From Lytechinus pictus (taxonomy: Eukaryota), in NCBI RefSeq assembly GCF_037042905.1, contig NC_087254.1:10044001-10108000 (forward strand): a DNA stretch of 64,000 nucleotides, in the 5' to 3' direction. Position numbers and translations under genes: made by a program. This document shows, one piece after another, positions 1,686 to 63,365 of the stretch. Under the pieces are notes generated by a model. That model saw only the letters and a list, made by a program, of their open reading frames with translations. It did no database searches and was not told where the DNA came from. The first letter of the stretch is position 1, and each line of letters starts with the position of its first letter.

Positions 1686-3260
1686 CAGTGGCAGCATCAA
1701 GATTTTTAAACTAGAAAGGCAATTGGGGCAAATGGACAATTTTTTTTTTTTTTTTGGGGGGGGGGCAAATTAAGGCGGACACAAATTTTTTGCCCGTTTC
1801 ACAAAATCGAGCGCGAAACGCGAGCTAAAAAATTTAATACAGGCCCTACTGACTTGAAAAAGAGACCTGATACTATTTGCAGTGACTTGTGAAAATGATA
1901 TCTCACCTATAATGCGAGGGCGAAGCGCGAGCTGAAAGTTTTGTTTATATCCTGAGGTAATATCTGGACGTTCTCAGCACTTTTTGTAACCATGAACGGG
2001 ATCGATTGTCTAAACAATTGAAGCGAGCTTGAAGCGAAAGTTCCAAAATTTGAATAGTGAAAATGCTGTTTTTGAGCCCTTTTGCAGCTTGAGTAGGGTG
2101 CTTGCATTTACTATACATTTTTTTTCAGTTTAAAAAAATTCTTTTGGGGCAATAATGCCACCTGGTATATACCGCTCAGAAAAAATGATAAACTGTCGAG
2201 CACACGGGGCTGTTGAACTTTGTCGGTAAATGTCAATTTAACTGTACACTTTTATCGGTAAATTGTGACTTTTACGCAATGCGACTTTTAGAGCTCTCTG
2301 AACATGGACTGGGCTGACCAGGGACAGGAAAAAGATAGAGAACAACTTTTAGGTAATACAATTAGGCCTATAACAAAAAAAAATTCGCTCGCGCTACGCG
2401 CTCGCATCAATTTTTTTAGTTGGGTAGTACTGGGTACCTAAGATAAATGTTTAGTTTTCAGGTTGAAATATCAAAAATTTTCAGCTCGCACTTCGCGCTC
2501 GCGTCAATTAATAATTTAGAAACCAATTTGTTCATTGTTACTAAAGTGCTTAGAATATCCAGTTCTTAAGTCAGAATATCAAAAGTTTTAGCTCGCGCTT
2601 AGCGCCCGCACGACTGTTTAGATACCCATCTTATAAAACTGCTTAGAATGTCTCGTGTCCAGTTAGGAATATCAACATTTTTAGCTCGCGCTTCGCGCTC
2701 GCATAATTTATTAAGGAAGATACCCATCCTATTCTTAGTTAAGTGCACAAAATGTATCGTTTTAGGTCTAAATTTTTAGAAAATTTCAGCTCGCGCTTCG
2801 CGCTCGCATCAATTAATTATTCAGTTAGAAACCAATTTGTTCATGGTTACTAAAAGTGCTTAGAATATCCAGATCTTAAGTTGGAATATCAAAAGTTTTA
2901 GCTCGCGCTTTGCGCCCGCACGACTCTTTAGATACCCATCTTATAAAACTGCTTAGAATGTCTAGTGTCCAGTTAGGAATATCAAAATTTTTAGCTCGCG
3001 CTTCGCGCTCGCATAATTTATTAAGGAAGATACCCATCCTATTCATAGTTAAGTGCATAAAAATGTATCGTTTTAGGTCTAGATTTTTAAAAAATTTCAG
3101 CTCGCGCTTTGCGCTCGCAATTATTATTTTTAATATAATTTTAGTGTAAATTGTTAGGCACGTGCAATTGAAAGTGAAGACTTTTTGGGGGTGCATGGGG
3201 CTTGTCAAATTTTTGTAAACAAAATGTCCCCCTTGAAAATCCTGAATCTGCCCCTGGGTT
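1686..3260. repeat. Interspersed repeat rich in GCTCGCGCTTCGCGCTCGC motifs with an internal ~310-bp tandem duplication
   Basis: ~2517-2826 is repeated at ~2826-3120. The motif recurs at 5880-6060, 6960-7320 and 9990-11000. Confidence 0.7.
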
Positions 3261-7497: not shown

Positions 7498-7954
7498 CCT
7501 TTGGAACGTTAATGATTTCGCCCCCCAATCTGAAAAATGGATCGACGCCCCTGCTGAGAGGTACTGTTTCTATGGTAACTGTCGGATAAAATGGGACTTG
7601 TCACTTGTCGGATAAAATGTCCGACAAGTCCTTTCATGAAACGCCCCCCTGATATGCCTCTAATACTTCATTCCCTAGTCAGTTAAGGAAGTACATTAAA
7701 AATCGGATTATGACGTAAAATGTCGGTCCCAGACGCGTAAATAATCATATCTGATTGATACACGTATGTAAAAACTCCAATACACCAACAAACACACACA
7801 CCCTCGTTGTGGTAGTGTGCGCCTGTAGGCCTACTCCAAGCTACACTGGGAAATTACGAACTGATGCAGAGGTTGGAGCTTTGAGCCCCGCGGTAATACG
7901 TACTTCGGGTCGGTCCAGACGTAAATATGATCGTATCTGATTGATACGGCTTAA

Positions 7955-8529
7955 AGGTCAAGTCCACCCCAGGAAAATGTTGACTTGAAAAATCAAACTA
8001 GCATATAACGCTGAAAATTTCATCAAAATTGGATGTAAAATAAGAAAGTTATGATATTTTAAAGTTTCGCTTATTTTTCACAAAAAAACAGTGATATGCA
8101 CAAATCTGTGACATGCAAATGAGACAGTCAATGATGTCCCTCATTCACTTTTTCTTTTGTTTTTTATTGTTTGAATTATACAATATTTCATTTGTTACAG
8201 ATTTGACAATAAGGACCAACTTGACTGAACCATATAGTATTAAACAATACTAATTCCACATGTTCATGGAGGAATTAATCGCTGTTTCACTTGACAATGA
8301 AGAGAAAATAAGAATATTTAATATTTCTCACAATAAAATACAAAAGAAATAGTGAGTGGATGACGTCATCAGTCTCCTCATTTGCATACCGACCAGGATG
8401 TGCATATAATTGTTTTGTGAATTTAAGCAAAACTTTAAAATGCCATAACTTTCTTATTTTACATCCTTGATGCTTGATGTTTTTTTTTCTTTTATTCAAA
8501 TCAACTTTTTGTTTGGGTGGACTTGTCCT
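7955..8529. mobile_element. Non-autonomous DNA transposon with TTAA TSD (Kolobok-like); second copy at 23492-24048
   Basis: ttaa|AGGTCAAGTCCACCC ... GGGTGGACTTGTCCT|ttaa. It separates a SINE body from its (CA)n tail. Confidence 0.8.
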
Positions 8530-9307
8530 TTAAATACACACACACCCACCCACATACATACATACACACGCGCGCTATTTTCAAATTTACAAAGTACGAT
8601 GTATTCTAAATGTTGGACAATAGTGATGTAACGCTTCTTCCGCAAAATTATTTCATCATTCGTCGATCGGGCGTCTGCTTGTAATTTTTGAAAACGGAAT
8701 CAATAATGCTTCCAAATTATAGACGCAGAAAGGTCTATAATCTTCTCGATCTTTATCGAATTTCTCCATCATGTCCATAGCACAGAAAGCAGCATTGAAT
8801 AATTAAGTATCAACTAAGCTAGAACGGGTTTTTCCACAGATCCAAAGCAAATTTAATTTCCCAAAACTGAATCTCGAATTTCCTGAAATACATACACAAC
8901 ACGGGCCTGGAATTTTCAAATTGTATTTATTAACGAAAATGTGACAATAACAAAGCGAGCCCACACTTGGCCCAAGTGACCAAAATAAAGGATTTCCCGG
9001 AATTCGGGAAAATTTCTGTCAAAATTGAAACACTGGCAAGATGACACGTAACAAGTTTATTGACAAAAACCAAAGCTTTACTGCCTTGAAAAGGAGAACC
9101 CCCTCCCCCGTTCTTCTAGGCCTACCGTATTCATGCGCGTATGTGGGCCCCCTGGATAGGTAAAAGGTGGGCGTCAAAAGGAAGAAGGAAAGAGAGGAAA
9201 AGAAAAAGGGGTCGGAGAAAAAAAAAGGAGGAAAAGAAGAAGAGAAAGAGAAAAAACAAAGGGCCGGGAAAGAAAGAGAGAAGGAAAAAGGATTAGGGAA
9301 GGAGAGG

Positions 9308-9825: not shown

Positions 9826-11789
9826 TCGTATTGCCTGGTTAAAGTGAGATACGTGTCCTGCCCAAAAAGATTAAATGCGGGTGAAATAAAATATCCCGTT
9901 TTACGATAAACAGTGTGCTCACGATTCAAGTCTGTTTAGTGAGATAGGTATCCTGTTCAGGATTACAATTAAGAAAAAAGGTGCTGAATATAAAATTCAG
10001 CTCGTGCTATACGCGCTCGCAATATTTGATTAGTCACTTACGTTTCCTCTCCAAAGATCCCACGTATATAAGTCCTTAAAATGTTAGTTTTTCAGGTCAG
10101 TATACATAGGCGGATCCTGGGGCAAAGCGCCCCCTTCATCCGATGGAGGTGCAAAGAAAAAGGGGAACGAAAAAGAGTAAAACGATTAGAAGAGGTATCA
10201 GAGCTTAAAAGAGTCCTTCTTAAGTCAGTATATAAAACAATTCTGCTCGCGCTCGCATTTATCAGTTGTGTTTTTTTTGGGGGGTTACACATTGTTTTCT
10301 TTATTAAAAAGACGATAAAATTGTCAATATTTCAGATCGGAATATCGCGCTCGCGTCATTTATTTAGTGAAGATACCCTCTCCTTTCCATTGTTACAAAA
10401 TGTGCATAGAATGTCCCATTATGAGGTAAAAATCTATTTATAAAAAAGTGCTACAATTTCGTAAAGTCAGAAAATCTAAAATTTTCAGCTCGCGCAATAT
10501 TGAGATACCTATTCTCTTCGTTGTTACCAAAAGTGCACACAAAAAAGTGCAGTTTAAAAGTCGGAAAATAAAAATAATTGCGCTCGCATAAACTGTTTAG
10601 TTAGACAATGTCTATCCTCTTAATGATTACGGAAAGTAAATTTCCAGTTTTCTGGTCGGAAAATGAAAATTGTTAGCTTTCGCTTCGCGTTCGCAGCAAT
10701 ATTGTTTGCTTAGATACCTATTCTGTTCATGTTTACAAAAAGTGCTTACAGTCTATACTGCTCGCCCTTCGCGCTCGCATTATACGATTGGTGAGATATG
10801 TATCCTTTTCATGAGTCACTGGAAACCGCCACTAACAGTTCGCTTTTCAGGTCAGTGTATTAGAATTTTTAGCTCGCGCTCGCATTAATTATTTAGTTAC
10901 ATACGTATCTTGTTCATAATCATAAACAACTGCTTAGAATATCAAATTTTATATCATAATACATAAAATAAGAAAAAACTGCTCGCGCTTCGCGCTCGCA
11001 TTAATTCTTTAATGAAGTGGTACTACATATATTCATGGATTTTTTTTCATGAACACATGATCATTTAGAAAAATGTGGTCTTCAATTGCTTTTTTGTCAT
11101 GTGACTATGAAATAAGATTATTCAACATGAATTTGAGGCGGGGAGGGGCGCCATTTTTCGAAAAGTACACTGGGGAGCAAAAATCAGGTCGGGCCCCGGG
11201 GTGCAAAATACTGGAAACGTGCATGCCTGCTATTATTATCTAGTTAAGCGCTTTGTTGATTCAAAGTCTTGCCTTCGATGCTCCCATGGAATACACAGTA
11301 TGACACTGCTGCGAAATTTGACGTCGAAAGATGCGGATTTGTAATTTCTTGAAATTTATAGGGTTGATGACCCTGGGATATTCAATGCATGATATTTGTT
11401 TTCTTGTAATCATGACTACTGCCCCAAAAATACAGGTTGCTAGGATTCCGAACCAAAATTTGCTGCAAAAAATGTGGGAAACGTTATATCAATTGTTAAA
11501 TATTGTCGCCATAAATCACATTTTTTTCCATTTTCAAAAGGACAAAAATAATTTTTTGTTCACCCACTTTGCTCGCTTGCAAATTGTTAGATATGCCCCA
11601 CACGTGCCAGATTTAGCCCCTTGAATATTTTTGGCTTATATTCCGCCAGTGCTTTGAATGGCGTCACTCGTGTTTAAAATGCTTTATTGAACCGTAACTA
11701 AATATTTACACAAGTCACTTTTGATTAATAATTAACTCGTCGAGAGTACAAGATAGACAGAGCGAGAGTACCCATCATGTGCTCAGTCT

Positions 11790-11900
11790 CAAATTATGCA
11801 CATCTTTTTGGAAAGACGCATGCGCAAACCTCTCCACCATTAAGAATCCAGCCTTGGTCGTGATGTGGAAAAGGGTGTGGAAAGCGTAGTCTATAAGTGG
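11790..11900 (+). promoter_or_regulatory. Putative promoter of Ig receptor copy 1 with NRF1/P3A2-type site
   Basis: ACGCATGCGCA at 11816-11826. The block TTTTGGAAAG-CGCATGCGCAAAC..AATCCAGCCTTGGT is conserved at 42822-42872 upstream of copy 2. Confidence 0.55.
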
Positions 11901-12281
11901 TATTCATCTAGACTTGTTTTAGTGAGAACCTTCTGTAGACAACTGGGAAACATATATAAAAATAAGTTTGTAACGAACAATGAAAACTTCACCATTATTT
12001 TTTCACATGAAGTTATTCTTATTCTTCCGTTTTATATTGTTATTAAACCATTTCCAATAATGTATGTTACATGAATTACCTCTAAAACGTCTCCTGCTGG
12101 AGACTACGAAAAATCTATTCTAAGAAACTAAGTTTTATTACTCTCGTTTCCGTGGAATATTGTTTTATCCATAATTATCAGTTTTAACGTACTTGAAAGT
12201 ATCTTGCGTTTTAATATAGATGAAGCCAGGCGATCACGGTAGACGTAGATTTTCGACGTTCCAGTGTTCTCACAATCTTGA

Positions 12282-14489
12282 ATGATGGATGCTAAGACAA
12301 AATTTTTTTTAATTATTCTAATCACATCATATATCCAGAATGCCAGATGTGATCTCTTTTTGGAATACAGTGGTAGCACCAGAGCCGAGGTTAGCATTGG
12401 TACCGTTGCAGCGTTTGAATGTTCCTCGTCATCACGAATCTCTGAAGGCAAATTGCGAACCGGTCGGATTGAATGGGGCAGAAACACAAGATACTCGGTA
12501 TCTACTCAAGTCATTGCACGGTGGACAAATGAGAATGGAATTGAGATCTTAGTCGATAACTCCGATGAACGATACAATATTGAAGGTGGAATCTTATCAA
12601 ATGGACGTTTCAGACAATATCTGACTATTCGAAAAGTTCAACGGATTGACCAGACCGATAGTACTGGGTATTACTGTGCTTTATTCAATTCTTCAGAGAG
12701 TATGTTGGTTAAATCTGGATACGCTCCATTGACTGTCAAATATCCTCCTGCAGAACATTACCCTCTTTGTACCGCGACACCAAATGACATCACCAGAGAA
12801 GTAATGCTTGAGTGTGCATCTGAGAAAACTACTCCAGATGTAACTGTACAATGGTATAAGGACGGTGAGAAGGTGTCAGATGCCCATCCAAGTGGTTACA
12901 AAATGAAATCGACCTATGAGGCCCGTGAAGATGAATTACACGGCGAATTCGAATGCCGACTATATTACGAAGACGGAGCTGATGTTGAGGTTCGTCGATC
13001 CTGTACATTCAGTAAACCTCGAGTGGCTATTTTAAGGATGGGAGGGGAAACTCTAAATGCAGAAAGTATATATCATGCATTTTCTGTATCTAATCCACCT
13101 CTCACATCCGACATCAATTGCACACTGGAAGCATCTTCAGACACTTCTCAACGTTTCGATAAAGAGTTTCCTGGTTATGGGGTGGCAGCCGTTGGACCTG
13201 TAGCTCCAACCGATAATGGTAGCACACTGGTGTGTCAGGCCAAAAATGTTTTCGGAACTGAAGATGCCAGGATGAGAGTATACAGTCCAAGCGATAACCA
13301 GGATGGAGAAACTACTATCCCGTCCGTTGTAACCAGTTATATGCCAGGCGGTCAAGTTCTCCAAGCCACAATTTGGCCCAAAGTACTAGAAATAATTCCT
13401 GGAGAGAACGCGACGTTTGTGTGTAGCTACAGCCTTACCATCCACTCGCATGTTACGGCACAAGTAGAGATCAAATGGGAACATGACGGCACCATTACTA
13501 CTGAGACAGAAGAGAATGTCCTTTTCATAACCAATGCAGAGTATGAAGATTTCAAAGAGACATTGATAACTTGCGTTGCTTCTGTAATTACCGATGACCC
13601 AATGATCAATACGGTTCCTGAACGTAGTTCTGCAACAGTTCGAGTCGGCAAAGCGAGTCCTTGCGACCCCAAACTATTATCTTCAAGTTCGAGGCAAGGA
13701 CAGTCCCAGACCAATATGAAATCATATTATATCGCCGGCATAATCGTTTTGGCCGGATTAGTTTTCATATTGATAATCGCTTTAATGTTTGTGGTGGTTA
13801 GAAAACAGAAACATCAGAAGAAACCTCGCTCTGACTCTGAACAATCTTCCAGCTCTCAAGTCACCTACCGTGCTGATTCTGCCTCTGCAGAAGAAAGACC
13901 TGACAATAGAATCGTCCGTCAAGCATCCATCCAGCGAGCATTACCGGCCGAACCAAATGAACCCGCACCAACCACGACACTCCGATCCGTTGTGACATCA
14001 CCTTCTCCAGCCACTTTGACATTAATCAATGATCCTGACAGACACATGCTGGAATCCATCTCCAGTTGCAACACCTTTAATACAACCACTACGGATCTTC
14101 CATACCAGGAGATGGTGGGCGATACTGGCATCAGCAAGAGCCGCCACGGAAGTGTCTCGAGCAACGTCAATTTCCAACGCCACGTCCCTCTTGTCCGCAG
14201 TCTCTCCATTCCTGCATCGATGATCCCTGTTCCAAATGGAGGCTTCTTGCCTTCAATTGCTGGTGACCATCCTGGTATCCAACGTACGGTGAGCGAAGGT
14301 GCTGATGACGACCCTTACGAAGATCCCGATGCTATTCGAGAGCGTCGTCGGACGAACCGAGCTCCGAACAACGATTACCAGTCGACAACCAGTGGCTTAA
14401 CGATAATGTCCATGGCAATTCAGAATAAGAAACTAGCGTCCCAGTATGTCAACTCATCGCTTACGGATGATTCTGTTTTCCTTGTTTGA
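12282..14489 (+). CDS. Intronless type I membrane IgSF receptor, copy 1 (SP, 4 Ig-like domains, TM, Tyr-motif tail), 735 aa
   Basis: Hydrophobic N-terminus. V-type FEC..IEW..YLTI..GYYC; LEC..QWYKDG..FEC; SNPP..DNGSTLVCQAKN; GENATFVC..IKW..LFI..ITC. TM YYIAGIIVLAGLVFILIIALMFVVV (13725-13799) followed by RKQKHQKK. Open frame kept in the paralog. Confidence 0.93.
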   Translation: MMDAKTKFFLIILITSYIQNARCDLFLEYSGSTRAEVSIGTVAAFECSSSSRISEGKLRTGRIEWGRNTRYSVSTQVIARWTNENGIEILVDNSDERYNIEGGILSNGRFRQYLTIRKVQRIDQTDSTGYYCALFNSSESMLVKSGYAPLTVKYPPAEHYPLCTATPNDITREVMLECASEKTTPDVTVQWYKDGEKVSDAHPSGYKMKSTYEAREDELHGEFECRLYYEDGADVEVRRSCTFSKPRVAILRMGGETLNAESIYHAFSVSNPPLTSDINCTLEASSDTSQRFDKEFPGYGVAAVGPVAPTDNGSTLVCQAKNVFGTEDARMRVYSPSDNQDGETTIPSVVTSYMPGGQVLQATIWPKVLEIIPGENATFVCSYSLTIHSHVTAQVEIKWEHDGTITTETEENVLFITNAEYEDFKETLITCVASVITDDPMINTVPERSSATVRVGKASPCDPKLLSSSSRQGQSQTNMKSYYIAGIIVLAGLVFILIIALMFVVVRKQKHQKKPRSDSEQSSSSQVTYRADSASAEERPDNRIVRQASIQRALPAEPNEPAPTTTLRSVVTSPSPATLTLINDPDRHMLESISSCNTFNTTTTDLPYQEMVGDTGISKSRHGSVSSNVNFQRHVPLVRSLSIPASMIPVPNGGFLPSIAGDHPGIQRTVSEGADDDPYEDPDAIRERRRTNRAPNNDYQSTTSGLTIMSMAIQNKKLASQYVNSSLTDDSVFLV

Positions 14490-15661
14490 GAGAGTGACGA
14501 CTTCAACATTCATCTTTTTTTCACCTCGTTAAAATACCATGATTATCGGAGATTTCTTACATTCCAGGAGGATATCAATAGCAACGAAGCATATACATTG
14601 TGAGAAATTCTGTTTTCTCGAAATATTATTATGCTGATATTATTGTTATGGCATTAAATGTGTAATAGCACCAAAATTATCATTATCGAAAGTTGATTTT
14701 GCCAGAGCAATAACAAAGATGATGACAGAGGTGGTGACGACAAAGATGGCGGTGGTTTTGATAAGGATGGTGATCATAGCAACGAAGAAGAATCGGAGTG
14801 ATGCATTCATTATAATGACAGTGACGACGACAGTCTTACGATGACGAAAGTGATAACGATAATGGTGATGGCGACGACTATAATGATTGTGAGAACTATA
14901 TCAGAAGAATAAGTAAGAAGAAGTTAAAATAATTTTTTGAGGACAGAATAGACATCGAAAAAAGACTTTGTTGTAAGTCATATTAATTTCCCTAAACATG
15001 TTTGGGAATTAAGATCGTTCTCTAATCTTTGTGATTTCTTATTAAACATTATACTATAAAGGCGAACATTTTTAGAACTTAAGACCAGTTGTAACTTATA
15101 TAGGCCTACCAGTTAGGTGCTTGTTTCTTCGAACATGACTAATTTCTTCTTTCAAAAATGTATACTTATATGCATAGTTGTGAAATAATGCTATGTATGT
15201 TCTTCTTGATGTAAAAGAGTGAGTAAGAGACAGTGCTTACCTCTTCGTAATATAATTTAGTTTACATATTTTTATATGTAATGACAAGTTTTAGAGCTGT
15301 TTGGAGAATACATATACATTTTTTTTTATGTCTATTATTTCTTCTTCTAAAGAGATATGTTTAATCAACCACATATGCAGGAGACCTTACAATTCAAACT
15401 CAGATTGATCTTATGTTGTGTATTTATCCGATATATCAAAATATGATCGATCGCGATTTCAATTTCAGTTTGATTCAAATTTATCTCAAATCTTAGACGA
15501 GTCCTTGAGGTCAATGCTAGGATTGGGTCAGATTTGACTTTATTGCAACTCTTAGACGGGTCCCTGAAACAGTTCGATTCGAATTCAGAGCAGCTCTTAA
15601 ATCATCAGCCTGGTCTCTGATCTTCAGAGTAGGTGGATGCATCGATGAGAGAAATAGTTAA

Positions 15662-16147
15662 AGGGATGGTCCAGGCTGGAGATATTTCTATCTCAATAAA
15701 TAGAGTAAAATTCACACAGCAAAATGCTGAAAATTTCATCAAAATCGGATAACAAAGTTATTGAATTTTAAAAATTTGCATTATTCCGGTGTAACAGTTC
15801 TAGTCATGTCTTTTTGAATATTCATTAGGTGGGCTGATGATGTCATATCCCAACTTGTTCTTTTGTATTTTATTATATGAAATAAGGTTTATTCAACACT
15901 TTTCTACCAAGAACTTAAACAATTTGATTAGGTACATTAGTTATTTATTGCCGCAACCTATTTCATCATAACGGAGACACACCATTTACACATTTATGAA
16001 AAAATGAAACAAAATATTGATAAACTTTAAAGTTCAATAACTTTGTTATTTGTTATCTGATTTTGATGAAATTTTCAGCATTTTGCTCTGTGAAATTTAC
16101 CGTATTTATTTAAATATAAATATTTTCAGCCCGGACGTACCATGCCT
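15662..16147. mobile_element. TTAA-flanked non-autonomous DNA transposon (Kolobok-like)
   Basis: ttaa|AGGGATGGTCCAGGCTG ... CAGCCCGGACGTACCATGCCT|ttaa with long imperfect TIRs. Absent from the paralogous flank. Confidence 0.75.
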
Positions 16148-23039: not shown

Positions 23040-23491
23040 TAATTAATCTTGTCTTGAATTCCACCAAGAAGCATCAATCTGACGGACTGCTCATTGGACA
23101 GACACAAATATTCTTTGTTATTCACTCATATCTATACGGGAATGGATCGTTCTATTTAAATGTAATTGAATTTTGTCATGATTAATCTTTTTATTTTACA
23201 CTTTGCTTTCCATACTTCACTTCCCATTTCTATGCCATTGTCACCTGTTCATCTCATTCCTTAGTTTATATATCAGATTCTATTGCCATTACAACTCCAC
23301 ATGTTTCTATTGTCTTCTCATTTATATTCAGAACATTCTTCTTCATTCATGACCTCGTGCTCATTGGTTTACCTTTCACCCTTAGTTCTTCCACTTTTCT
23401 TGATTCTTCTATTCTCTCTGTTTCTATTAGTTAAATTGGTTATACGAAATTATTTCTGAACATATTTGAATACGGTATATTATTTGTTTAA

Positions 23492-24048
23492 AGGTCAAAT
23501 CCACCCAAGAAAACTGTTGATTTGAATAAATAGAAAAAAGACAAACTAGCATAATTCATGCAGAATCGGATGTAAAATAAGAAAGTTATGACATTTTAAA
23601 GTTTCGCTTATTTTCACAAAAGAGTGATATGCACACCTCAGTGATATGTAAATGAGACAGTTGATGTCCCTTACTATTTCCTTTTTTTATTGTTTGAAAA
23701 ATACAATATTTCATTTATTTGACAATAATGACCAACTTGACTAAACCAATGCTAATTCTACATGTTCAGGGAGGAATTAATTGTTTCTCTTGACAATGAG
23801 AAGAAAATTACATTTCATATTTCATATAATAAAATACAAAATAAATAGTGAGCGAATGACGTTATCAGTCTCCTCATTTGCATACCGATCAGGATGTGTA
23901 TATAACTGTTTTGTGAAAATTAAGCGAAACTTTAAAATGTCATAACTTTCTTATTTTACATCCGAATTTGATGATATTTTCAGTGTTATGCTTGTTGGAT
24001 ATTTCTCTTTTATTAAAATCAACTTTTTTGTTGGGGTGGACTTGTTCT
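23492..24048. mobile_element. Kolobok-like TTAA element (same family as 7955-8529)
   Basis: ttaa|AGGTCAAATCCACCC ... GGGGTGGACTTGTTCT|ttaa; interior aligns with 7955-8529. Confidence 0.8.
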
Positions 24049-25294
24049 TTAAAAGCAATGCCAAGTGAGGTCTGGCCCAAGAAATAAGAGCAACACTGGA
24101 CTTCATTTTGTCGACATCTTTATTTTGAGTTTAGTTCAGCTCCAAATATATTTTAGGTTCTTCAGCAGCAATCTACATTATATTTGTTGTTGAAAAAAAA
24201 GTGATGCTCATTAATTTATTACAGAAAAAAATAATACGAGATATATAAACAACAAAAAATGCATGGGGCGTCAAAAAATTTCTTGAAGATGAATGTATTC
24301 TTTTTATTTCACAATCAACTTTCTTTTGTCAGTATTTTTCATGTCCAGGGGCCCATTTCAAAAGTACTTTAACATTATGGCAACTACCATGGAAACCACA
24401 ATTATAATTGGATGTTGCGCCATATTAAAGACAAATTAAGTTATGATAGTTGTACCTCTTTATGAAACAGGCCACAGGAGTGTCATTGCCATTCTGTTTA
24501 GAGATGAAATTTTGTTTCTAACATTTTGTCAGATTTCAAACAATCCTAGATCTCTGTTTCCAAAATAAAACATTAGTCCAGAAACGTTCCGTCCAGTACC
24601 CATCATTTTTATTTTCACAGTAACTGGTTTCATGTATTGATATTTGATAGTGCATTACTAGTGATAATGTTAATACATGTATTTGCATGAACCAAATTTC
24701 TGTGATGTGCAAAATGCTCAACTTCTCTTATCTGTGAACAAATCCTGAATTTAAATTCAAGTATAATTTAAGAAATAAATATATTTTTAATAAATGGTGA
24801 ACATGCTCAGACGATATTTTCCAGATCTACAAAAGAGGAAGATCATAATCCTTCACAATCGTAATTTCTGCAAATTGAGACTGACTTGCAACTGTAACAA
24901 TGGGAGATGTACATTGGCGGTGGAAGCCAGAAAATAAAAAAAAGGTTATCAACTAAAAATTTAGGGGGGGGGCCGTCCCCCACCTCAAATTTAGGGGGGA
25001 CCTGTCCCCGCTTCCGCCGCCTATGGAGATGTCAAAGTGAAAAATTCAAGTGGAAATTAGAATAACACATTTAATGGTGTCGTTGTTTATAATACGATAT
25101 CAGTCATTAAAGTTGTAGATTTCCTGCAAATGATTTATTTCATATGGATTTATCATAAGTAATTCAGATGTAATCATATATACACCGCTTTTAATTTGTT
25201 GGTGATGCTGCATGTCTGACATTGCATCTTTTATGTTGAGACTGTTAACAGGTTGTTAGCTCTGGCAAACTACAAACCACTGTCCCTTTGTTAG

Positions 25295-27352: not shown

Positions 27353-28871
27353 GTTGGTTATCTGTCATGCAACACATTCCATATAAATTTTGTTAGCAAA
27401 TAATAATAATAAAGGTTTAAAGAATTGCAAAAGCGATTAGTGAAAGGCCAGTGCCCAATCAGCAATTTCTTACATTTACATTGTAACTGGCAGGCTTGCT
27501 GATCAGGGTCCAATTTTTATAATGCACAAATAGAAATTCTCCTAATTGAAATGATTTTGCTTAGTTGTAGAGAAAAGTGATCGTCTAGAAATTCCTTCAA
27601 GAGCTTGAAATAATAATTTTTTATCATTTGAAAAGTACATGTAAACATAGGGTCATGTTAAGAAAAAAAAAGATAGAGGCACAATTTTTTGCTTCCATGA
27701 GAGCCTATAAGCTAAGCCATATAATCTTTTTTTAGGGATGAAATGTTTGTTGAATAAAATGTCAGCAAATTATGTCTTCTCTGTATGATATACGTACCCA
27801 ATCACTTCAGCCCCCCCCCCAAAAAAAAAAAAATATTAATAATAATACTAAATAAAAAATAAACCAATGAAAAAAGAATGAAATTACACAAATAAAGCAA
27901 TCAAATTTTGGAACAGAAATGTGCAGATTTATGCCAGCACACAAAGGACATATTTCATATTGAAAAAGGGTCACTTTTGTTCTGGGGGATTTCTATTTCG
28001 GGCAAGCCAGTGCCAACCCAAACCCCTTCCCATCGCCCCACGATTGAGCTGCCCCTGGATAAAGGAAAGTGCGCTCATTTTAAAATCCTTTACATAATAA
28101 CAGACTGACAATTTTTGACAAACTAGAAACAATAACTGTTTTTAATGCAAGTTCTCTCCAAAATTATAGTAGCCTAAATTTAGTGACTAGGCCTAGACTC
28201 TATATTTCAATGAAAACAAGTTAATTAGCTAAGCCTATGACGTCATATGGGGAGGATTTAGAGTCTAGGTTTTTACATTATTTATTCGTAGGCCTAGTCT
28301 TTTCCAGAGAGTTTGTGGGAAATAACTAAGTTAGCCTTACTCCTTAGCCTAGGACTCCAAAATTCCTACTAGGGTCTAGATCTACTTTCCACCATTTGTT
28401 TCGATCTAGAACAGATCGACCAGAGGGTCCCACAAAAATATGGCCAAACTGAGCAATCGGTCTAACTTCTTTCAGTTCAGGCTACCCAAGTTTCACCACT
28501 CCAGATCCCCTCTTATTAATTCCTTGCCACCCTCCTATCTGCCACTCTTGCTGCTGACAAAACGACTCAGTGCCTAGCTCTCATCTATTATAGACCCTAC
28601 TACTAAAACTAAAGTACTAGGCTAGGCTAGTCTATATCTTAATAATTCATCCCGGAATTCATCATATTCGTTCAGAGGTCTAACTTACATGTACTAGTGT
28701 TACTAACGTTGGACCTATGTGTAGACTCTAGACTACCGAGGCCTAACGTTAGACCAACAACAGGTCTAACTTTTGTTAACGTTACTTATATAGGTCTACC
28801 TAACGTTAGATCTAACTATAACTATAAGTAACGTTAGGCCTAATGTTACTGTTAGTTAGACTCTAAGTTAA

Positions 28872-29298
28872 AGATAAATGACAGTTGTGGTAACGATTTC
28901 AAAATGAGTTCGTACAGTCTACAGAATCCAACGAAATTACCACCAAAGTGTCTGTTTGTATATATAAAAAATATGTGCCAAAGGATTCCGGAAGAAATTG
29001 TGTAATTGCTGAGAAATTAGCAAATAAGCACGGGATTTGGGTCAAGGCAAGTGTCGGGCCGACATTCAAAGCAATAATTTTTAATAGTACACTGTCCCAC
29101 GTGCGCTTATCTGTGTTGGTGATCTTCAGTATGAACATTTTTCAGCGTAGATTTCAAGATTTCACAAAGTTCAGTTCATGTAACTGTACCATTATACCAG
29201 ATCTAGATCCTCGATAATATAGTGACAATTAAGCTCGGTTTTACACACTTTCTCGTGAAATCAGTGTTTCCTGCAACTAGGCCTACTTTCATTTATCT
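28872..29298. mobile_element. TTAA-type non-autonomous element (inverted relative to the copy at 61211-61605)
   Basis: Aligns end to end with the reverse complement of 61211-61605; ttaa on the left, tcaa on the right. Confidence 0.85.
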
Positions 29299-42900: not shown

Positions 42901-43307
42901 CTAAGCGGGATTGATCTAGAGTTACTTTATTGAAGATTTTCTGAAAACACTTTAAATAGGTAGGGGAATTTGTGCCAAACAAAGACAATCAAATTTATGC
43001 AGGTCAGTTGAAATGCATTTTTTTAACATGAACTTATTATTCTTCTTTAAGTAATCATATTATATTATAGAAGAATGATACGTTTAATTTTAAGTAATAT
43101 CGTAAACGATTCCCCCATACACGCATGTTTTAATGATACATCTGTGACATGTCTCCTGATGCAGACTACGACCAATATGTACTTCCTTGTTTCAATGGGA
43201 TATTGTTTTACCGACATAATCAACACAAGTCTTACACTATTATAAAGGATGCAACTTATTCAAAGCAGGCGCAGATTTCAGACATACAGGTGTTCTCACA
43301 ATCTCAA

Positions 43308-45509
43308 ATGATGGATGCTAAAAGAAAGTTATGTTTGTTTATTTTCATCACATCATATATCGGATATGCCAAATCCAGCCTTTATATGGCCTATAGCGGG
43401 AACACTGCTGAGGTTAGCCTTGGCACCCGTGCAGTGTTTGAATGTTCCTCGTCATCGCAAATCTCTCAAGACAAATTGCGATCCGGTCGGATTGAATGGG
43501 GCAGAAACACGAGATACTCGGTGTCTGCTCAAGTCATAGCACGGTGGACAAATGAGAATGGAATTGAGATCTTAGTCGATAACCCCGATGACCGATACAA
43601 TATTGAAGGTGGAATCTTATCCAACGGACGTTTCAGACAATATCTGACTATTCAAAAAGTTCAACGGATTGACCAGACTGATAATACTGGGTATTACTGT
43701 GCTTTATTCAATTCTTCAGCGAGTATGTTGGTTAAATCTGGATATGCTCCATTGACTGTCAAATATCCCCCTGCAGAACATTATCCTCTTTGCACAGCGA
43801 CACCAAATGACATCACCAGAGAAGTAACACTTGTGTGTACATCAGAGAAAACTACTCCAGATGTAACTGTACAATGGTATAAGGACGGACAGAAGGTGTC
43901 AGATGCACATCCGACTGGTTACAAAATGAAATCGACCTATGAGGCCCTTGAAGATGAATTTCGAAGCGAATTCGAATGCCGACTACATTACGTGGACGGA
44001 ATTGATGTTGAGGTTCGTCGATCCTGTACATTTAGTAAACCGCGAGTGGCTATTTTAAGAATTGGAGGAGAATCTCCAAATGAAGAAAGTACATATCATG
44101 CATTTGCTGTATCTAATCCCCCTCTCACATCCGACATCAACTGCACGCTGGAAGAATCTTCAGACACTTCCCAACGTTTCGATAAAGAGTTTCCTGGATA
44201 TGGGGTGGCAGCCGTAGGACCTGTAGCTCCAACTGATAATGGTAGCACACTGGTGTGTCAGGCCAAAAATGTCTTCGGAACTGAGGATGCCAGGATGACA
44301 GTATACAGTCCAAGCGATAACCAGGATGGAGAAACTACTATCTCATCCGTTGTGACCAGTTATATGCCAGGCGGTCAAGTTCTCCAGGCCACAATTTGGC
44401 CCACAGAACAAGAGATAATTCCTGGAGAGAATGCGACGTTTGTGTGTAGCTACAGCCTTACCATCCACTCGCACGTTCCGGCAAAAGTAGAGATCAAATG
44501 GGAACATGATGATACTGTTACCACCGAGACAGAAGATAATATCCTTTTCATTACTAATGCAGATTATGAAGATTTCACAGAGACATCGGTAACCTGCATT
44601 GCTTCTGTAATTACCGATGACCCAATGATCAATACGGTTCCTGAACGCAGTTCTGCAACAGTTCGAATCGGCAAAGCGAGTCCTTGCGACCCAAAACTAT
44701 TATCCTCAAGTTCGACGCAAGGACAGTCCCACACCAATATGAAACCCTATTATATCGCCGGCATATTCGTTTTGGCCGGATTGGTTCTCATATTGATTAT
44801 CGCTCTAATGTTTGTAATGGTGAGAAAACAGAAACATCAGAAGAAATCTCGCTCTGACTGGGAACAATCTTCCAGATCTCAAGTTACCTACCGTGCTGAT
44901 TCTGTCTCTTCAGGAGAAAGACCTGACAACAGAATCGTCCGTCAATCATCCATCCAGCGAGCATTACCGGCCGAACCAAATCAACCCGCACCAACCACGA
45001 CACTCCGATCCGTTGTGACCTCACCTTCTCCAGCCACTTTGATAATCAATGATTCTGGCAGACACAGGCTGGAATCCATCTCCAGTTGCACCACGTGTAA
45101 TACAACCACTACGGATCTTCCATACCAGGAGATGGTGGGCGATACTGGTATCAACAAAAGCCGCCACGGAAGTGTCTCGAGCAACGTCAATTTCAAACGC
45201 CACGTCCCTCTTATCCGAAGCCACTCTGTATCGGCAACAATGATACCTGTTCCGAATGGAGGCTTCTTGCCTTCAACTGCAAATGACCATCCTGGTTTCC
45301 AACGTACGGTGAGCGAAGGTGCTGGTGAAGACTGCTACGAAGATCCTGATGCTATTCGAGAGCGTCGTCGGGCGAACCGAGCTCCTAGCAACGATTACCA
45401 GTCGACAGACAATGGCTCATCTATAATGTCAATGACAATGCAGAATAAGCAGCTAGCATCCCAGTATGCCAACTCATCGCTTACGGATGATTCTGTTTTC
45501 CTTGTCTGA
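43308..45509 (+). CDS. Intronless type I membrane IgSF receptor, copy 2, 733 aa
   Basis: Colinear paralog of 12282-14489 with two 1-codon indels. Start set at MMDAK (43308) because it aligns with copy 1 and precedes the signal peptide. Confidence 0.93.
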   Translation: MMDAKRKLCLFIFITSYIGYAKSSLYMAYSGNTAEVSLGTRAVFECSSSSQISQDKLRSGRIEWGRNTRYSVSAQVIARWTNENGIEILVDNPDDRYNIEGGILSNGRFRQYLTIQKVQRIDQTDNTGYYCALFNSSASMLVKSGYAPLTVKYPPAEHYPLCTATPNDITREVTLVCTSEKTTPDVTVQWYKDGQKVSDAHPTGYKMKSTYEALEDEFRSEFECRLHYVDGIDVEVRRSCTFSKPRVAILRIGGESPNEESTYHAFAVSNPPLTSDINCTLEESSDTSQRFDKEFPGYGVAAVGPVAPTDNGSTLVCQAKNVFGTEDARMTVYSPSDNQDGETTISSVVTSYMPGGQVLQATIWPTEQEIIPGENATFVCSYSLTIHSHVPAKVEIKWEHDDTVTTETEDNILFITNADYEDFTETSVTCIASVITDDPMINTVPERSSATVRIGKASPCDPKLLSSSSTQGQSHTNMKPYYIAGIFVLAGLVLILIIALMFVMVRKQKHQKKSRSDWEQSSRSQVTYRADSVSSGERPDNRIVRQSSIQRALPAEPNQPAPTTTLRSVVTSPSPATLIINDSGRHRLESISSCTTCNTTTTDLPYQEMVGDTGINKSRHGSVSSNVNFKRHVPLIRSHSVSATMIPVPNGGFLPSTANDHPGFQRTVSEGAGEDCYEDPDAIRERRRANRAPSNDYQSTDNGSSIMSMTMQNKQLASQYANSSLTDDSVFLV

Positions 45510-46175
45510 AATGGTGACGACCTCAGCATTCATCTTCTTGCATCTTTTCAAAACACCACTATTGTGGATTTCTTACATTCCAATGGGTATGTTAATTATC
45601 AATACCAACGAAGCATATCCATGTACATTGTAAGAAGTTTTGTTGTCTGAAAAGATTATTATGCTGACATCGTTGTCGATAGATTATGGCAAAATATGTG
45701 TAATAGCACCAAATTATCATTATCGAAGCTTGATAGTAATCATACCAAAGCATTAATGAAGATGACGAAGATGGTGGTGAAGACGAAGATGATTGTGGTT
45801 TTGGTAAGGATGACGATAGCCTGAGCGACGAAGAAGAAGTTGATCAGGCTGGTGGTTTATCATTATGATGACTATGACGACGAGATTTACCATAGGATTA
45901 GGAGACTGTTGATGGCGATGATGATGACGACGACGATGTTGCATGTGGGGATTGCCTGATAACGACAAGAAGGGAGGATTAAACAAGTTAAACAAAAATG
46001 CAAAGAAATTGTCGGGGATAGAATAGAAAAGCCTGCGCGAGTCACCTCAATGTGCCTCAACATGTATGAGAATTAAGATTGTTCTCGAATTTCTGTGCTT
46101 ATGAATATTTAGGCCCTGTTTGAAAATGATGAACATTTTATCAAGGCGAGTTGTAAACTTAATATACTGACAAGT

Positions 46176-55483: not shown

Positions 55484-55939
55484 TAGACAGCTGGCAGCCG
55501 TCTGTTTCGAGGAGTTTTTTAACATTTTTTTATTTTTTTAATTTCTCCTCATATACACAGACGGCTCGCTATCGTGCAGCCACCATTAGGGGACTTGCAA
55601 TGCAAAATCCCCCCGTCGGGGCTCTTCAATTTTTGTCTTTAATAAATAAAATTTTTGAAAATTAACGCGACCAAAATGCAAATTAATATTCCCTCTTGGC
55701 ATTAATTGCCAAAAAACAGAGAAAAATCAAGTTAAAAGAAACAAAAACAGTGACTTACCTCGGCTGTCGCGCAAATTCACTTCCCCGTTTTATCCGCTCT
55801 TAAGTACATAAACATATGGCCATTGGCATTGAGTCCCCTGTACAGATCGCGCTAGAACTTCGGTCTCTGTATTTGGTGAGTGAAGCCAACGGAGTTCAGC
55901 TGAACAACCAACATAACAGAGACTGAAGCTTTTGGTCTA
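55484..55939. mobile_element. ~450-bp non-autonomous DNA transposon, TAGAC..GTCTA termini, 9-bp TSD (Academ/AcademH- or Mutator-like)
   Basis: TSD GAGTGACCT at 55475-55483 and 55940-55948. Confidence 0.8.
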
Positions 55940-56003
55940 GAGTGACCTATGGTAGTGGATCGTATTACCGAACACTTTTCATGAATTTGATCATATCAAA
56001 CAC

Positions 56004-56448
56004 TAGACAGCTGGCAGCCGTCTGTTTCGAGGAGTTTTTTAACTTTTTTTTTTTTTAATTTCTCCTCGTACACAGACGGCTCGCTAGCGTGCAGCCACCA
56101 TTAGGGGACTTGCAATGCAAAATCCCCCCGTCGGGGCTCTTCAATTTTTGTTTTTAATGAATAAAAATTTTGAAAATTAAAGTGACCAAAATGCAAATTG
56201 ATATTCCCTCTTGTCATTAATTGCCAAAAAACAGAGAAAAATCAAGTTAAAAGGAACAAAAACAGTGACTTACCTCGGCTGTCGCGCAAATTCACTTCCC
56301 CGTTTTATCCGATCTTAAGTACATAAACATATTGCCATTGAGTCCCCTGTACAGATCGCGCTAGAACTTCGGTCTCTGTATTTGGTGAGTGAAGCCAACG
56401 GAGTTCAGCTGAACAACCAACATAACAGAGACCGAAGCTTTTGGTCTA
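56004..56448. mobile_element. Second copy of the TAGAC..GTCTA element
   Basis: TSD ATCAAACAC at 55995-56003 and 56449-56457. Sits inside another TIR element (~55951-56883, GATCGTATTACCGA / TCGGTAATACGATC). Confidence 0.85.
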
Positions 56449-59751: not shown

Positions 59752-60334
59752 AAAACAAGTCGTGTCTTTTACACAAGTTTTTTTTCTTCTTCAAACTCAG
59801 TTCAATTCCACTCACACTAATGGAGCTCAAAACTTTTTAGCTCCATTGTCTCCAACTAGTTGAATGGTACTGTGAAGCAGAAAAAAACAGGTAAAAAAAG
59901 TTAGAATTTGCCTTTTGATTGGGTTGGCCGTGGCGTGGGTGAACTTAGCCAGGATAGACTAGTCTTGAGGACTCAATGAGTCCATCATGATGATGTTTTT
60001 TTAATATTTTGATGTATACTTCTTCATCATGGAGTCTTGAACCGTCGGCCATACAGCGTTCTCGCCAGGATTTTTCTTATGCGTGTCGGAAATCCGTCGA
60101 TTCGGCGGTGGCCAAATTTGCACGTGATGTTTTGATTTTCACATGCGCTGCGCTTTGATCCGATCCAAAGTCAAGTTTCATTGCCAATCCGCGAAGTTTA
60201 ATAGATGATGTAATGCTGTTTTAATCGGCGGCGGACACCAACCTAAAACTGATATCGGCGAAAATATTGGAATGTTAAGTTGTTGTTTATCTAAAAATTT
60301 AGGGGTCTTTTTTGTCTGGATATGTTTTAAACTG

Positions 60335-63300: not shown

Positions 63301-63365
63301 TAAGAAATATAAATGACACATTTATTCTGACAACAGCGGAAATGTAAATAAAATAGAACAGAATT
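60335..63365. repeat. Satellite with a 360-bp dimeric unit (~171 + ~189 bp related monomers)
   Basis: CACAAACATCTCAGATTAA recurs at alternating ~171/189-bp spacing; exact 360-bp period across ~61950-62900. Confidence 0.95.
61211..61605. mobile_element. TTAA-targeting element (Kolobok-like) inserted into the satellite
   Basis: Satellite CTCAGATTAA|insert|TTAATGAGCGATC gives a clean TTAA duplication. Confidence 0.9.

What the first reader, a model, noticed from the sequence alone, without database searches (positions are those of the whole stretch)
13800..14489. Cytoplasmic tail is a dense docking platform without a catalytic domain
Seen in both copies: RALPAEP (13935-13955), YQEM (14103), acidic YEDP (14316), YVN/YAN (14445), RxxS sites (RQAS/RQSS, RHGS, RTVS) and an invariant C-terminus NSSLTDDSVFLV. 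Known consensus matches: RxLPxxP class I SH3 ligand, YxxM for PI3K p85, YxxP for Nck/Crk, YxN for Grb2, hydrophobic-x-hydrophobic PDZ class II end. These cores survive although the tail has ~38 differences. RSLSIP (14-3-3 mode 1 consensus, 14196-14213) becomes RSHSVS in copy 2. Inference: an activating, actin-linked receptor with nephrin- or DSCAM-like logic, with paralog-specific rewiring.
Basis: partly seen in the sequence, partly recalled or inferred. Interest (0 to 1): 0.7.

Follow-up and report, generated by a model that had tools for sequence, protein, structure and literature searches.

The report
Sea-urchin Ig receptor's motif-rich disordered tail

Summary
Window 13800-14489 encodes the 229-residue cytoplasmic tail of Lytechinus pictus LOC129269816. 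This is a receptor with a signal peptide, four Ig domains and one transmembrane helix. A paralogue 85% identical lies at 43308-45509.

- **Observation:** The two tails differ at 37 substitutions plus one gap. Pfam, PDB and a profile search of 1.84 billion proteins find no domain in the tail, and AlphaFold2 gives pLDDT of about 30.
- **Two-copy argument:** it is weak. Ten core positions escape change by chance with P=0.16.
- **Distant homologues:** eight echinoid homologues at 35-41% identity, including Diadema, settle the question. The tail averages 32% identity, but the cores of RxLPxxP, YxxM, YE[DE]xD and YxN average 93%. Four of the five tail tyrosines are invariant.
- **Not above background:** the RxxS sites, the 14-3-3-like RSLSIP and the "invariant" C-terminus. 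Clade-B proteins end at YANS, so the PDZ-type end is known only in Lytechinus.
extended YQEMVGDTG[IV]xK[ST]R, PxPNGGF, and RAxxNDYQ, which resembles the APS-type Cbl site.

Best reading: a non-catalytic receptor that docks SH3 and SH2 proteins after tyrosine phosphorylation, in a small family found so far only in echinoids. "Activating", "actin-linked" and "nephrin/DSCAM-like" remain untested analogies, and the partners are inferred only.

The parts
12282..14489 (+). Copy 1 coding sequence in one exon (735 aa + stop): signal peptide, 4 Ig-like domains, transmembrane helix, tail. It is Lytechinus pictus LOC129269816.
   Evidence: The ORF is. P0001 is 99% identical. Pfam Ig_3, Ig_2, ig, V-set and C2-set_2 all pass their cut-offs. 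AlphaFold2 shows beta-sandwich domains at 25-153, 162-243, 247-332 and 348-455.
12240..12266 (+). Splice-acceptor-like pyrimidine tract plus CAG shortly before the ATG. Similarity between the two copies begins here.
   Evidence: Alignment of the two upstream regions. The self-BLAST block starts at 12264. Contigs of runs X1 and X2 cover 12291-15685 and nothing in 11182-12290.
13725..13808 (+). Transmembrane helix, residues 482-509, with no charged residue in its core.
   Evidence: AlphaFold2 helix H482-509; translation.
13800..14489 (+). Cytoplasmic tail, residues 507-735 plus stop. It is predicted disordered and has no domain.
   Evidence: pLDDT is about 25-47 throughout. No Pfam domain. No PDB match. 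The tail profile finds only family members among 1.84e9 representatives.
13857..13874 (+). Conserved island near the membrane, Q-V-T-[YF]-R-A (Q526-A531). The tyrosine is not conserved here (F in most homologues).
   Evidence: R530 is invariant. At Y529 the homologues read FFFLFYYF. Alignment.
13935..13955 (+). RALPAEP: R-x-L-P-x-x-P, a class I SH3-ligand consensus and the best conserved tail element.
   Evidence: R552, L554, P555 and P558 are invariant in all 10 aligned tails. The very divergent P0013 keeps it as RPLPPLP. The slid-pattern test gives 0.004.
14103..14144 (+). YQEMVGDTGISKSR: the YxxM core inside a 14-residue conserved block.
   Evidence: Y608, M611, V612, T615, G616 and R621 are invariant. 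The +1 and +2 positions vary (YQEM, YQPM, YESM) while Y and M are kept.
14196..14213 (+). RSLSIP, a 14-3-3 mode-1-like site. It is weakly conserved and absent from copy 2.
   Evidence: RS.[ST].P occurs only in copy 1, P0006 and P0010. Conservation is 0.59, and 19% of slid patterns do as well.
14220..14252 (+). MIPVPNGGFLP: a conserved PxPxGGF island with no partner assigned.
   Evidence: P649, P651, G654 and F655 are invariant. Present in 10 of 10 tails.
14316..14330 (+). YEDPD: an acidic tyrosine site followed by a weakly predicted basic helix (residues 682-691).
   Evidence: Y679, E680 and D683 are invariant. The +3 residue is P in the six tails outside clade B and L in the four clade-B tails. 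Helix H682-691 has pLDDT of about 47.
14358..14381 (+). RAPNNDYQ: a conserved RAxxNDYQ island around Y699.
   Evidence: N697, D698 and Y699 are invariant. RA..N.Y is present in 8 of 10 tails and in 0.14% of shuffles. Its register matches the APS-type Cbl TKB motif quoted in PMC2943896.
14445..14456 (+). YVNS: YxN, the Grb2-SH2-type consensus.
   Evidence: Y.N is present in 9 of 10 tails; the tenth, P0014, ends before this point. Four clade-B proteins end exactly at YANS.
14451..14486 (+). C-terminal NSSLTDDSVFLV. It is identical in the two window copies but not conserved in the family.
   Evidence: Conservation is 0.28 against a tail mean of 0.32. The other termini are listed.
43308..45509 (+). 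Copy 2 coding sequence (733 aa + stop), 85% identical to copy 1. The in-frame ATG at 43149 lies upstream of where similarity begins.
   Evidence: dN/dS against copy 1 is 0.28 in the ectodomain and 0.52 in the tail, with dS about 0.2.
44823..45509 (+). Copy 2 cytoplasmic tail (228 aa + stop). It has the same conserved islands, with RSHSVS in place of RSLSIP.

Best explanation
The stretch encodes the intrinsically disordered cytoplasmic tail of a receptor with four Ig domains and one transmembrane helix. The receptor belongs to a small family found so far only in echinoids.

The tail has no enzymatic domain. It is a string of short linear motifs held by purifying selection while the spacers between them drift.

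The most likely mechanism is inferred, not shown. When the ectodomain engages a ligand and receptors cluster, a Src-type kinase phosphorylates the four invariant tyrosines (Y608, Y679, Y699, Y722). That kinase may already be docked through its SH3 domain on the invariant R-x-L-P-x-x-P.

The phosphorylated tyrosines would then recruit SH2-type proteins:
- a p85-type partner at YxxM;
- a Grb2-type partner at YxN;
- an Nck-, Crk- or RasGAP-type partner at YEDP;
- possibly a Cbl-TKB-type partner at RAxxNDY.

On this reading the protein is a non-catalytic, tyrosine-phosphorylated docking receptor.
For: **Shown here:**
- Architecture and lack of a tail domain.
- The tail is predicted disordered, with pLDDT of about 30.
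- In 8 homologues at 35-41% identity, including Diadema, the tail averages 0.32 identity to copy 1. The 10 core positions of RxLPxxP, YxxM, YxxP and YxN average 0.93. No random set of 10 positions reached this in 1e5 draws.
- 21 tail positions are invariant, and they cluster in six islands.
- Four of five tyrosines are invariant, while Y529 is freely replaced by F or L.
- Within YxxM and YxN the defining residues are kept while the x positions vary, as expected for SH2 sites.
- RxLPxxP is present in all 11 family tails, including P0013, which has lost every other island.
- The tail is under purifying selection between the two window copies, with dN/dS 0.52.
- The gene is transcribed. Transcriptome-like contigs cover 12291-15685, and raw RNA-seq reads of run X21 lie in the orientation expected for a plus-strand RNA.
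- The genome encodes p85-type iSH2 and Cbl TKB domains.

**From established knowledge:** the consensus rules for class I SH3 ligands, p85 SH2 (pYxxM) and Grb2 SH2 (pYxN). The Cbl TKB rules are quoted from PMC2943896.
Against: - There is no direct evidence of phosphorylation or of any partner.
- The conserved islands are longer than minimal SH2 or SH3 motifs (YQEMVGDTG..KSR, PxPNGGF), so they may bind other partners or additional ones.
- The second hydrophobic position of the ideal class I ligand is E, Q, H or K here.
- YQEM also fits the YxxPhi endocytic signal.
- The proline of YEDP is replaced by L in clade B.
- RAxxNDYQ lacks the S/T at +1 and the P at +4 of the general Cbl motif.
- The eight 'distant' homologues come from few species and two or three old paralogue clades, so the counts are not independent.
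- RNA evidence is thin: depth is at most 1.3 in one raw run and zero in the other.
Confidence: 0.6

Rival explanations
1. The conserved tyrosine islands are mainly sorting signals, not SH2 docking sites. They would act as unphosphorylated YxxPhi motifs recognised by the AP-2 mu2 subunit and control endocytosis and surface level of an adhesion receptor.
For: YQEM fits YxxPhi in all 10 tails, and clade B adds YE[DE]L. A candidate Cbl-type site also points to down-regulation.
Against: YxN, NDYQ and YEDP do not fit YxxPhi, yet their tyrosines are just as invariant. The acidic surroundings of Y679 are typical of tyrosine-kinase substrates (established knowledge). The invariant SH3-ligand consensus has no role in AP-2 sorting. 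This rival does not exclude the main explanation.
Confidence: 0.15
2. The islands bind partners that are not SH2 or SH3 proteins, such as lineage-specific cytoskeletal or scaffold proteins. They would fold on binding, and the matches to textbook consensus motifs would be coincidental.
For: Conserved blocks extend well beyond the minimal motifs (MVGDTG..K[ST]R after YxxM; PxPNGGF[LIV]P). A weak helix is predicted at 682-691. Short consensus patterns are common by chance: single-motif P is 0.1-0.35 in shuffles.
Against: Within YxxM and YxN it is exactly the SH2-defining positions that stay fixed while the x positions vary. Four of five tyrosines are invariant, against a tail mean of 0.32. RxLPxxP is rare by chance (P=0.006) and universal in the family.
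Confidence: 0.2
3. The motifs are chance matches in a drifting low-complexity tail. They look conserved only because the two copies are recent duplicates.
For: Between the two copies, survival of the 10 core positions has P=0.16, and identical runs of 12 residues are common.
Against: Homologues at 35-41% identity keep these positions at 0.93 against 0.32 for the tail. The tail dN/dS is 0.52, below 1.
Confidence: 0.03

Closest known systems
Non-catalytic tyrosine-phosphorylated IgSF receptors with YxxM/YxN tails (CD28 YMNM plus proline motifs; DAP10 YINM)
   Same: An Ig ectodomain, one transmembrane helix and no kinase domain. The tail carries p85-type YxxM, Grb2-type YxN and a proline-rich SH3 ligand (sequence level).
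   Different: No detectable sequence relationship. This protein has four Ig domains rather than one. The tail is 229 residues long, with the motifs separate rather than overlapping. Binding is untested.
Nephrin / Kirre (SYG-2 / SYG-1) adhesion receptors
   Same: Multi-Ig adhesion-type ectodomain and a disordered tail with several tyrosine sites. YEDP resembles Nck-type acidic pY sites, and Kirre-type proteins bind Grb2 (from knowledge). The profile hits SYG-2 and Kirrel1 Ig domains weakly.
   Different: Nephrin has 8 Ig domains plus FN3 and Kirre has 5 Ig domains; this protein has 4 Ig domains and no FN3. The PDB hits are no better than those to titin, Robo, IgLON or DIP. A PDZ-type end is not conserved.
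Nectin / Necl (CADM) family
   Same: A V-set domain followed by C2-type Ig domains. Nectin-1 and Necl-4 ectodomains are among the Foldseek hits with the highest sequence identity, 17-18%. CADMs end in a class II PDZ ligand, as the two window copies appear to.
   Different: These proteins have three Ig domains and short tails with FERM- and PDZ-binding sites. This protein has four Ig domains, a long tyrosine-motif tail, and a hydrophobic end seen only in Lytechinus.
APS/SH2B-type Cbl TKB docking motif RA(V/I)xNQpY(S/T)
   Same: RAxxNDY keeps R(-6), A(-5), N(-2) and Y(0) in the same register in 8 of 10 tails. According to PMC2943896, Asn at pY-2 and the pTyr are the essential elements. The genome has a Cbl TKB domain.
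   Different: Position -4 is not V or I, position -1 is D rather than Q, and position +1 is Q rather than S or T. This is a resemblance only, and it was found post hoc.

Membership tests
Immunoglobulin-superfamily type I membrane receptor (generic) | Signal peptide, Ig-fold domains, a single transmembrane helix and a cytoplasmic tail | tested here: met
   Pfam Ig_3 scores 34.1 (cut-off 30), Ig_2 31.7 (27), ig 31.1 (21.8), V-set 26.3 (26) and C2-set_2 26 (21). AlphaFold2 shows four beta-sandwich domains, an N-terminal helix at 4-19 and a transmembrane helix at 482-509.
Nephrin / Kirre (IRM) family | 8 Ig + FN3 (nephrin) or 5 Ig (Kirre) ectodomain | tested here: not met
   4 Ig-like domains and no FN3 hit.
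Nephrin / Kirre (IRM) family | Specific sequence relationship to family members above generic Ig similarity | tested here: not met
   SYG-2 (5.9e-9) and Kirrel1 (3.7e-4) rank below titin, Robo, DSCAM, IgLON and DIP. All family-level hits are echinoid proteins.
DSCAM | 10 Ig + 6 FN3 ectodomain | tested here: not met
   4 Ig domains and no FN3.
ITAM-bearing activating immunoreceptors | YxxL/I-x(6-8)-YxxL/I in the tail, or a charged transmembrane residue for pairing with an ITAM adaptor | tested here: not met
   There is no YxxL/I/V in either window tail. The transmembrane segment has no charged residue.
ITIM-bearing inhibitory immunoreceptors | [ILVS]xYxx[ILV] | tested here: not met
   Absent from both window copies. 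Present only in two clade-B homologues, as INYEDL and LNYEDL.
Class I SH3 ligand | [RK]xxPxxP sequence in a disordered region, conserved | tested here: met
   RALPAEP at 552-558. R.LP..P is present in 10 of 10 aligned tails and in P0013. The region is disordered.
Class I SH3 ligand | Physical binding to an SH3 domain | not testable with these tools
   No candidate SH3 partner was defined, and no binding assay is available.
p85 SH2 site (pYxxM) | Y and M at +3, conserved | tested here: met
   YQEM, YQPM or YESM in 10 of 10 tails.
p85 SH2 site (pYxxM) | Tyrosine phosphorylation and p85 binding | not testable with these tools
   Only the presence of a p85-type iSH2 domain in the genome was shown.
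Grb2 SH2 site (pYxN) | Y and N at +2, conserved | tested here: met
   YVN or YAN in 9 of 10 tails; the tenth protein ends before this point.
Crk/Nck-type pYxxP site | Y with P at +3, conserved | tested here: inconclusive
   YEDPD is present in the six tails outside clade B. Clade B has YE[DE]LD in 4 of 4 tails.
Cbl TKB site | (D/N)XpY(S/T)XXP, or APS-type RA(V/I)xNQpY(S/T) | tested here: inconclusive
   N(-2) and Y are invariant, and R(-6) and A(-5) are kept in 8 of 10 tails. S/T at +1 and P at +4 are absent.
14-3-3 mode 1 site | RSx[ST]xP, conserved | tested here: not met
   Present in copy 1, P0006 and P0010 only. It is not above background.
PDZ class II C-terminal ligand | Hydrophobic-x-hydrophobic at the very C-terminus, conserved | tested here: not met
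   FLV is found only in the two window copies. The other termini read ANS, EQE, GAV or IFG.

The most novel reading that the evidence does not exclude
The family could be an echinoid-specific paired-receptor system invented independently of vertebrate immunoreceptors. Its members share a four-Ig ectodomain and most tail islands but differ in three ways. One old lineage carries YEDP, a Crk/Nck-type 'go' site. A second carries [IL]xYEDL, an ITIM-like 'stop' site. Tailless copies (P0003, P0004) would act as decoys or GPI-linked forms. A shared Cbl-type NDY site would serve for down-regulation.
Probability: 0.12. Interest if true: 0.6.

Novelty: new member of a known kind. Interest (0 to 1): 0.35.

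Why it matters
Echinoderms sit close to chordates, yet they have few characterised cell-surface signalling receptors apart from receptor kinases and innate immune families. This work defines a small lineage-restricted Ig receptor family with a clear and testable set of tail sites: four invariant tyrosines, one invariant SH3 ligand and two unassigned islands. L. pictus is a species in which knock-outs are feasible. The result also shows that motif conservation between two 85%-identical paralogues proves little, and that only deeper homologues separate real sites from chance matches.

Tried and rejected
- **Relatives outside echinoids.** A tail-profile search of 1.84e9 representatives found only family members plus three repetitive, unrelated proteins at E of about 1e-4. 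A word-indexed search with the tail region and one with the full-length profile returned the same 13 echinoid proteins or a subset of them. These libraries may lack some echinoderm classes, so 'found only in echinoids' is provisional.
- **Protein atlas.** The best feature hit for the tail was Orthopox A36R at 0.76. That protein is an Nck/Grb2-recruiting viral protein, but the score is below the level shuffled proteins often reach. Structure hits had TM of 0.23 or less. Rejected as evidence.
- **PDB.** The ectodomain gives only generic multi-Ig matches: antibodies, titin, nectin-1, SIRP-alpha, Robo and Dscam. No specific family could be assigned.
- **Homologue DNA.** The DNA of homologues P0006, P0007 and P0009 could not be fetched because the sample file was too large. 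All three come from one ENA assembly of unknown species and were called as uninterrupted ORFs.
- **Literature.** No paper names any of the five LOC identifiers. A general search on sea-urchin IgSF tails found nothing specific.
- **RNA.** No splice joint into 12264 was recovered, so the 5' exon is undefined. Copy 2 could not be checked.
- **Complex prediction.** No job was sent, because no specific partner protein is claimed.
Full report
**What is there.** The window comes from Lytechinus pictus: the 735-residue product of ORF 12282-14489 is 99% identical to 'uncharacterized protein LOC129269816'. A second ORF, with its likely start at 43308 and its end at 45509, encodes a 733-residue paralogue that is 85% identical.

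Pfam finds Ig-type domains above their cut-offs in the N-terminal two thirds and nothing meaningful after the membrane segment. An AlphaFold2 model built on ten family members shows:
- an N-terminal signal-like helix;
- four beta-sandwich domains at 25-153, 162-243, 247-332 and 348-455;
- a transmembrane helix at 482-509;
- a tail from 510 to 735 with pLDDT of about 25-47 and no structure apart from a weak helix at 682-691.

The stretch under review, 13800-14489, is exactly this tail, R507 to V735 plus the stop codon.

**Checking the observation.** The tails differ by 37 substitutions and one gap over 229 positions. RSLSIP in copy 1 reads RSHSVS in copy 2.

The absence of a catalytic domain holds on three counts: Pfam, a tail profile against all PDB sequences with no hit at E<=10, and the same profile against 1.84 billion representative proteins, which returned only family members.

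With 38 of 229 positions changed, ten chosen positions escape change 16% of the time. The identical 12-residue C-terminus is one of six identical runs of 12 or more residues.

Motif presence is also unremarkable one motif at a time in shuffles of the tail, with P between 0.10 and 0.35. RxLPxxP is the exception at 0.006. All four headline motifs together occur in 0.1% of shuffles, but that joint test is post hoc.

**The decisive test: distant homologues.** Searches recovered a small family:
- Diadema antillarum and D. setosum proteins;
- a third L. pictus gene (P0008, LOC129269093);
- several proteins from unlabelled ENA and Logan assemblies;
- tailless forms in L. pictus and L. variegatus;
- a Strongylocentrotus purpuratus fragment.

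A maximum-likelihood tree gives a well supported clade B (P0007, P0008, P0011, P0012) and a clade that holds the window copies, the S. purpuratus fragment and the tailless forms. The Diadema pair P0010/P0014 and the pair P0006/P0009 lie outside both.

Across eight tail-bearing homologues at 35-41% overall identity, the tail averages 0.32 identity to copy 1. The ten defining positions of RxLPxxP, YxxM, YxxP and YxN average 0.93. No random set of ten positions reached that value in 100,000 draws. Sliding each pattern along the tail gives 0.004, 0.027, 0.10 and 0.07 respectively.

Twenty-one tail positions are invariant, and they cluster in six islands. Four of the five tyrosines (608, 679, 699, 722) are invariant, whereas Y529 is F or L in most homologues. 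Within YxxM (YQEM, YQPM, YESM) and YxN (YVN, YAN) the defining residues are fixed while the x positions vary. R-x-L-P-x-x-P is present in every tail. That includes P0013, a very divergent member whose tail has otherwise become a tyrosine-free proline-rich sequence and reads RPLPPLP at this site.

**What does not hold up.**
- The three RxxS sites score 0.31, 0.69 and 0.38. RSLSIP scores 0.59 and the C-terminal twelve residues 0.28. None exceeds the slid-pattern background.
- RS.[ST].P is present in only three of ten tails.
- The 'invariant C-terminus' is specific to Lytechinus. All four clade-B proteins stop right after YANS, and the others end in SVEQE, PGAV or TIFG. A PDZ class II end is therefore not a family feature.
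- The proline of YEDP is kept in the six tails outside clade B. Clade B has YE[DE]L, and two of its members have a full ITIM-like [IL]xYxxL.

- The YxxM core sits inside a 14-residue conserved block, YQEMVGDTG[IV]xK[ST]R.
- M[IV]PxPNGGF[LIV]P is an equally conserved island with no obvious partner.
- Q-V-T-[YF]-R-A near the membrane is conserved.
- RAxxNDYQ around the invariant Y699 is conserved in 8 of 10 tails, and the pattern occurs in 0.14% of shuffles.

The last island matches, in register, four positions of the APS-type Cbl TKB motif RA(V/I)xNQpY(S/T). PMC2943896 states that Asn at pY-2 and the phosphotyrosine are the essential elements of that motif. It lacks the S/T at +1, and the resemblance was noticed after the fact, so this is a lead and not an assignment. 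The genome does encode a Cbl TKB domain and a p85-type iSH2 domain.

**Selection and expression.** Between the two window copies dS is about 0.2. dN/dS is 0.28 for the ectodomain and 0.52 for the tail, so both are constrained and the tail less so.

Similarity between the copies is confined to 12264-14792 against 43290-45838. It begins at a splice-acceptor-like CAG 16-18 bases before the ATG.

Contigs of two runs, which are probably transcriptomes, cover 12291-15685 continuously and nothing in 11182-12290. That gap holds no N. A sampled raw RNA-seq run shows a few reads over the coding region with the first mate on the minus strand, the orientation expected for a plus-strand RNA. A second raw run shows none. 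The gene is therefore transcribed, at a low level in those samples, as one long terminal exon.

**Mechanism.** Three steps are shown: the architecture, the predicted disorder, and selective conservation of the SH3- and SH2-type cores and of the tyrosines.

The rest is inferred. Clustering of the receptor would lead a Src-type kinase, perhaps docked on RxLPxxP, to phosphorylate Y608, Y679, Y699 and Y722. These would then recruit a p85-type, an Nck/Crk-type, possibly a Cbl-type, and a Grb2-type protein.

I put 0.6 on this general phosphotyrosine-plus-SH3 docking model, and much less on any single partner. The rivals are endocytic YxxPhi signals, non-SH2/SH3 partners for the longer islands, and pure chance. 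The last is contradicted for the conserved islands but stands for the RxxS, 14-3-3-like and C-terminal claims.

**Comparison with known systems.** Functionally the tail resembles non-catalytic tyrosine-phosphorylated Ig receptors such as CD28 and DAP10 (YxxM/YxN) or nephrin and Kirre. None of these memberships holds:
- no sequence relationship is detectable for the tail;
- the ectodomain gives only generic multi-Ig matches;
- the nephrin, Kirre, DSCAM and nectin domain counts are not met;
- there is no ITAM, no ITIM in the window copies, and no charged transmembrane residue.

'Activating' and 'actin-linked' therefore remain analogies.

**Verdict.** The general reading, a docking tail without an enzyme, is supported by a real conservation test. 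Several specific claims fail, and several conserved sites were overlooked. This is a new, uncharacterised member of a well known kind of receptor, of moderate interest.

Noticed in passing
G000:C10:10916819-10918197 (loci L006, L008, L009), about 870 kb from the window: A tailless paralogue, modelled in RefSeq as P0003/LOC129270152 (494 aa), ends in a hydrophobic segment with no cytoplasmic tail. In this assembly it is split over three reading frames with one TAG and lacks the N-terminal Met. The L. variegatus counterpart P0004 (492 aa) looks intact. It lies about 10 kb upstream of the clade-B gene LOC129269093. It may be a decoy or GPI-linked form, or a pseudogene in this haplotype.
   Followed up: partly
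window 12264-14792 vs 43290-45838: Similarity between the two copies (88% nucleotide identity) is limited to the coding exon plus about 300 bases of 3' UTR, although dS is only about 0.2. The flanks do not align. This could reflect exon-only duplication, gene conversion, or fast decay of the flanks.
   Followed up: partly
window 14021: Contigs of runs X1 and X2 lack 3 bases here. This is an in-frame one-codon indel at the same place where copy 2 has its one-residue gap, and RefSeq P0001 is 734 aa long. It is probably a length polymorphism in a non-conserved spacer of the tail.
   Followed up: no
window 43149-43307: Copy 2 has an in-frame ATG 159 bases upstream, giving a 786-aa ORF. Similarity to copy 1 and the acceptor-like CAG begin only at about 43290, so MMDAK at 43308 is the likely start.
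   Followed up: partly
window 15516-15900: Depth in the RNA contigs and raw RNA reads jumps to thousands here, with many variants and loose ends. This is a high-copy repeat just after the apparent 3' end of the transcript (AATAAA at 15695).
   Followed up: no
window 60315-63372: A large tandem array shows many self-matches at offsets of about 180 and 360 bases with 74-94% identity. Smaller tandem duplications lie at 55484-56448 and 2445-3119.
   Followed up: no
window 7951-8534 vs 23488-24053; 28868-29279 vs 61609-61224 (inverted): Dispersed repeat copies at 80-85% identity, probably transposon fragments.
   Followed up: no
P0013 (ENA assembly), tail: This divergent family member has a tail with no tyrosine motifs at all. 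The tail has become proline-rich but still carries RPLPPLP at the position of RALPAEP.
   Followed up: partly
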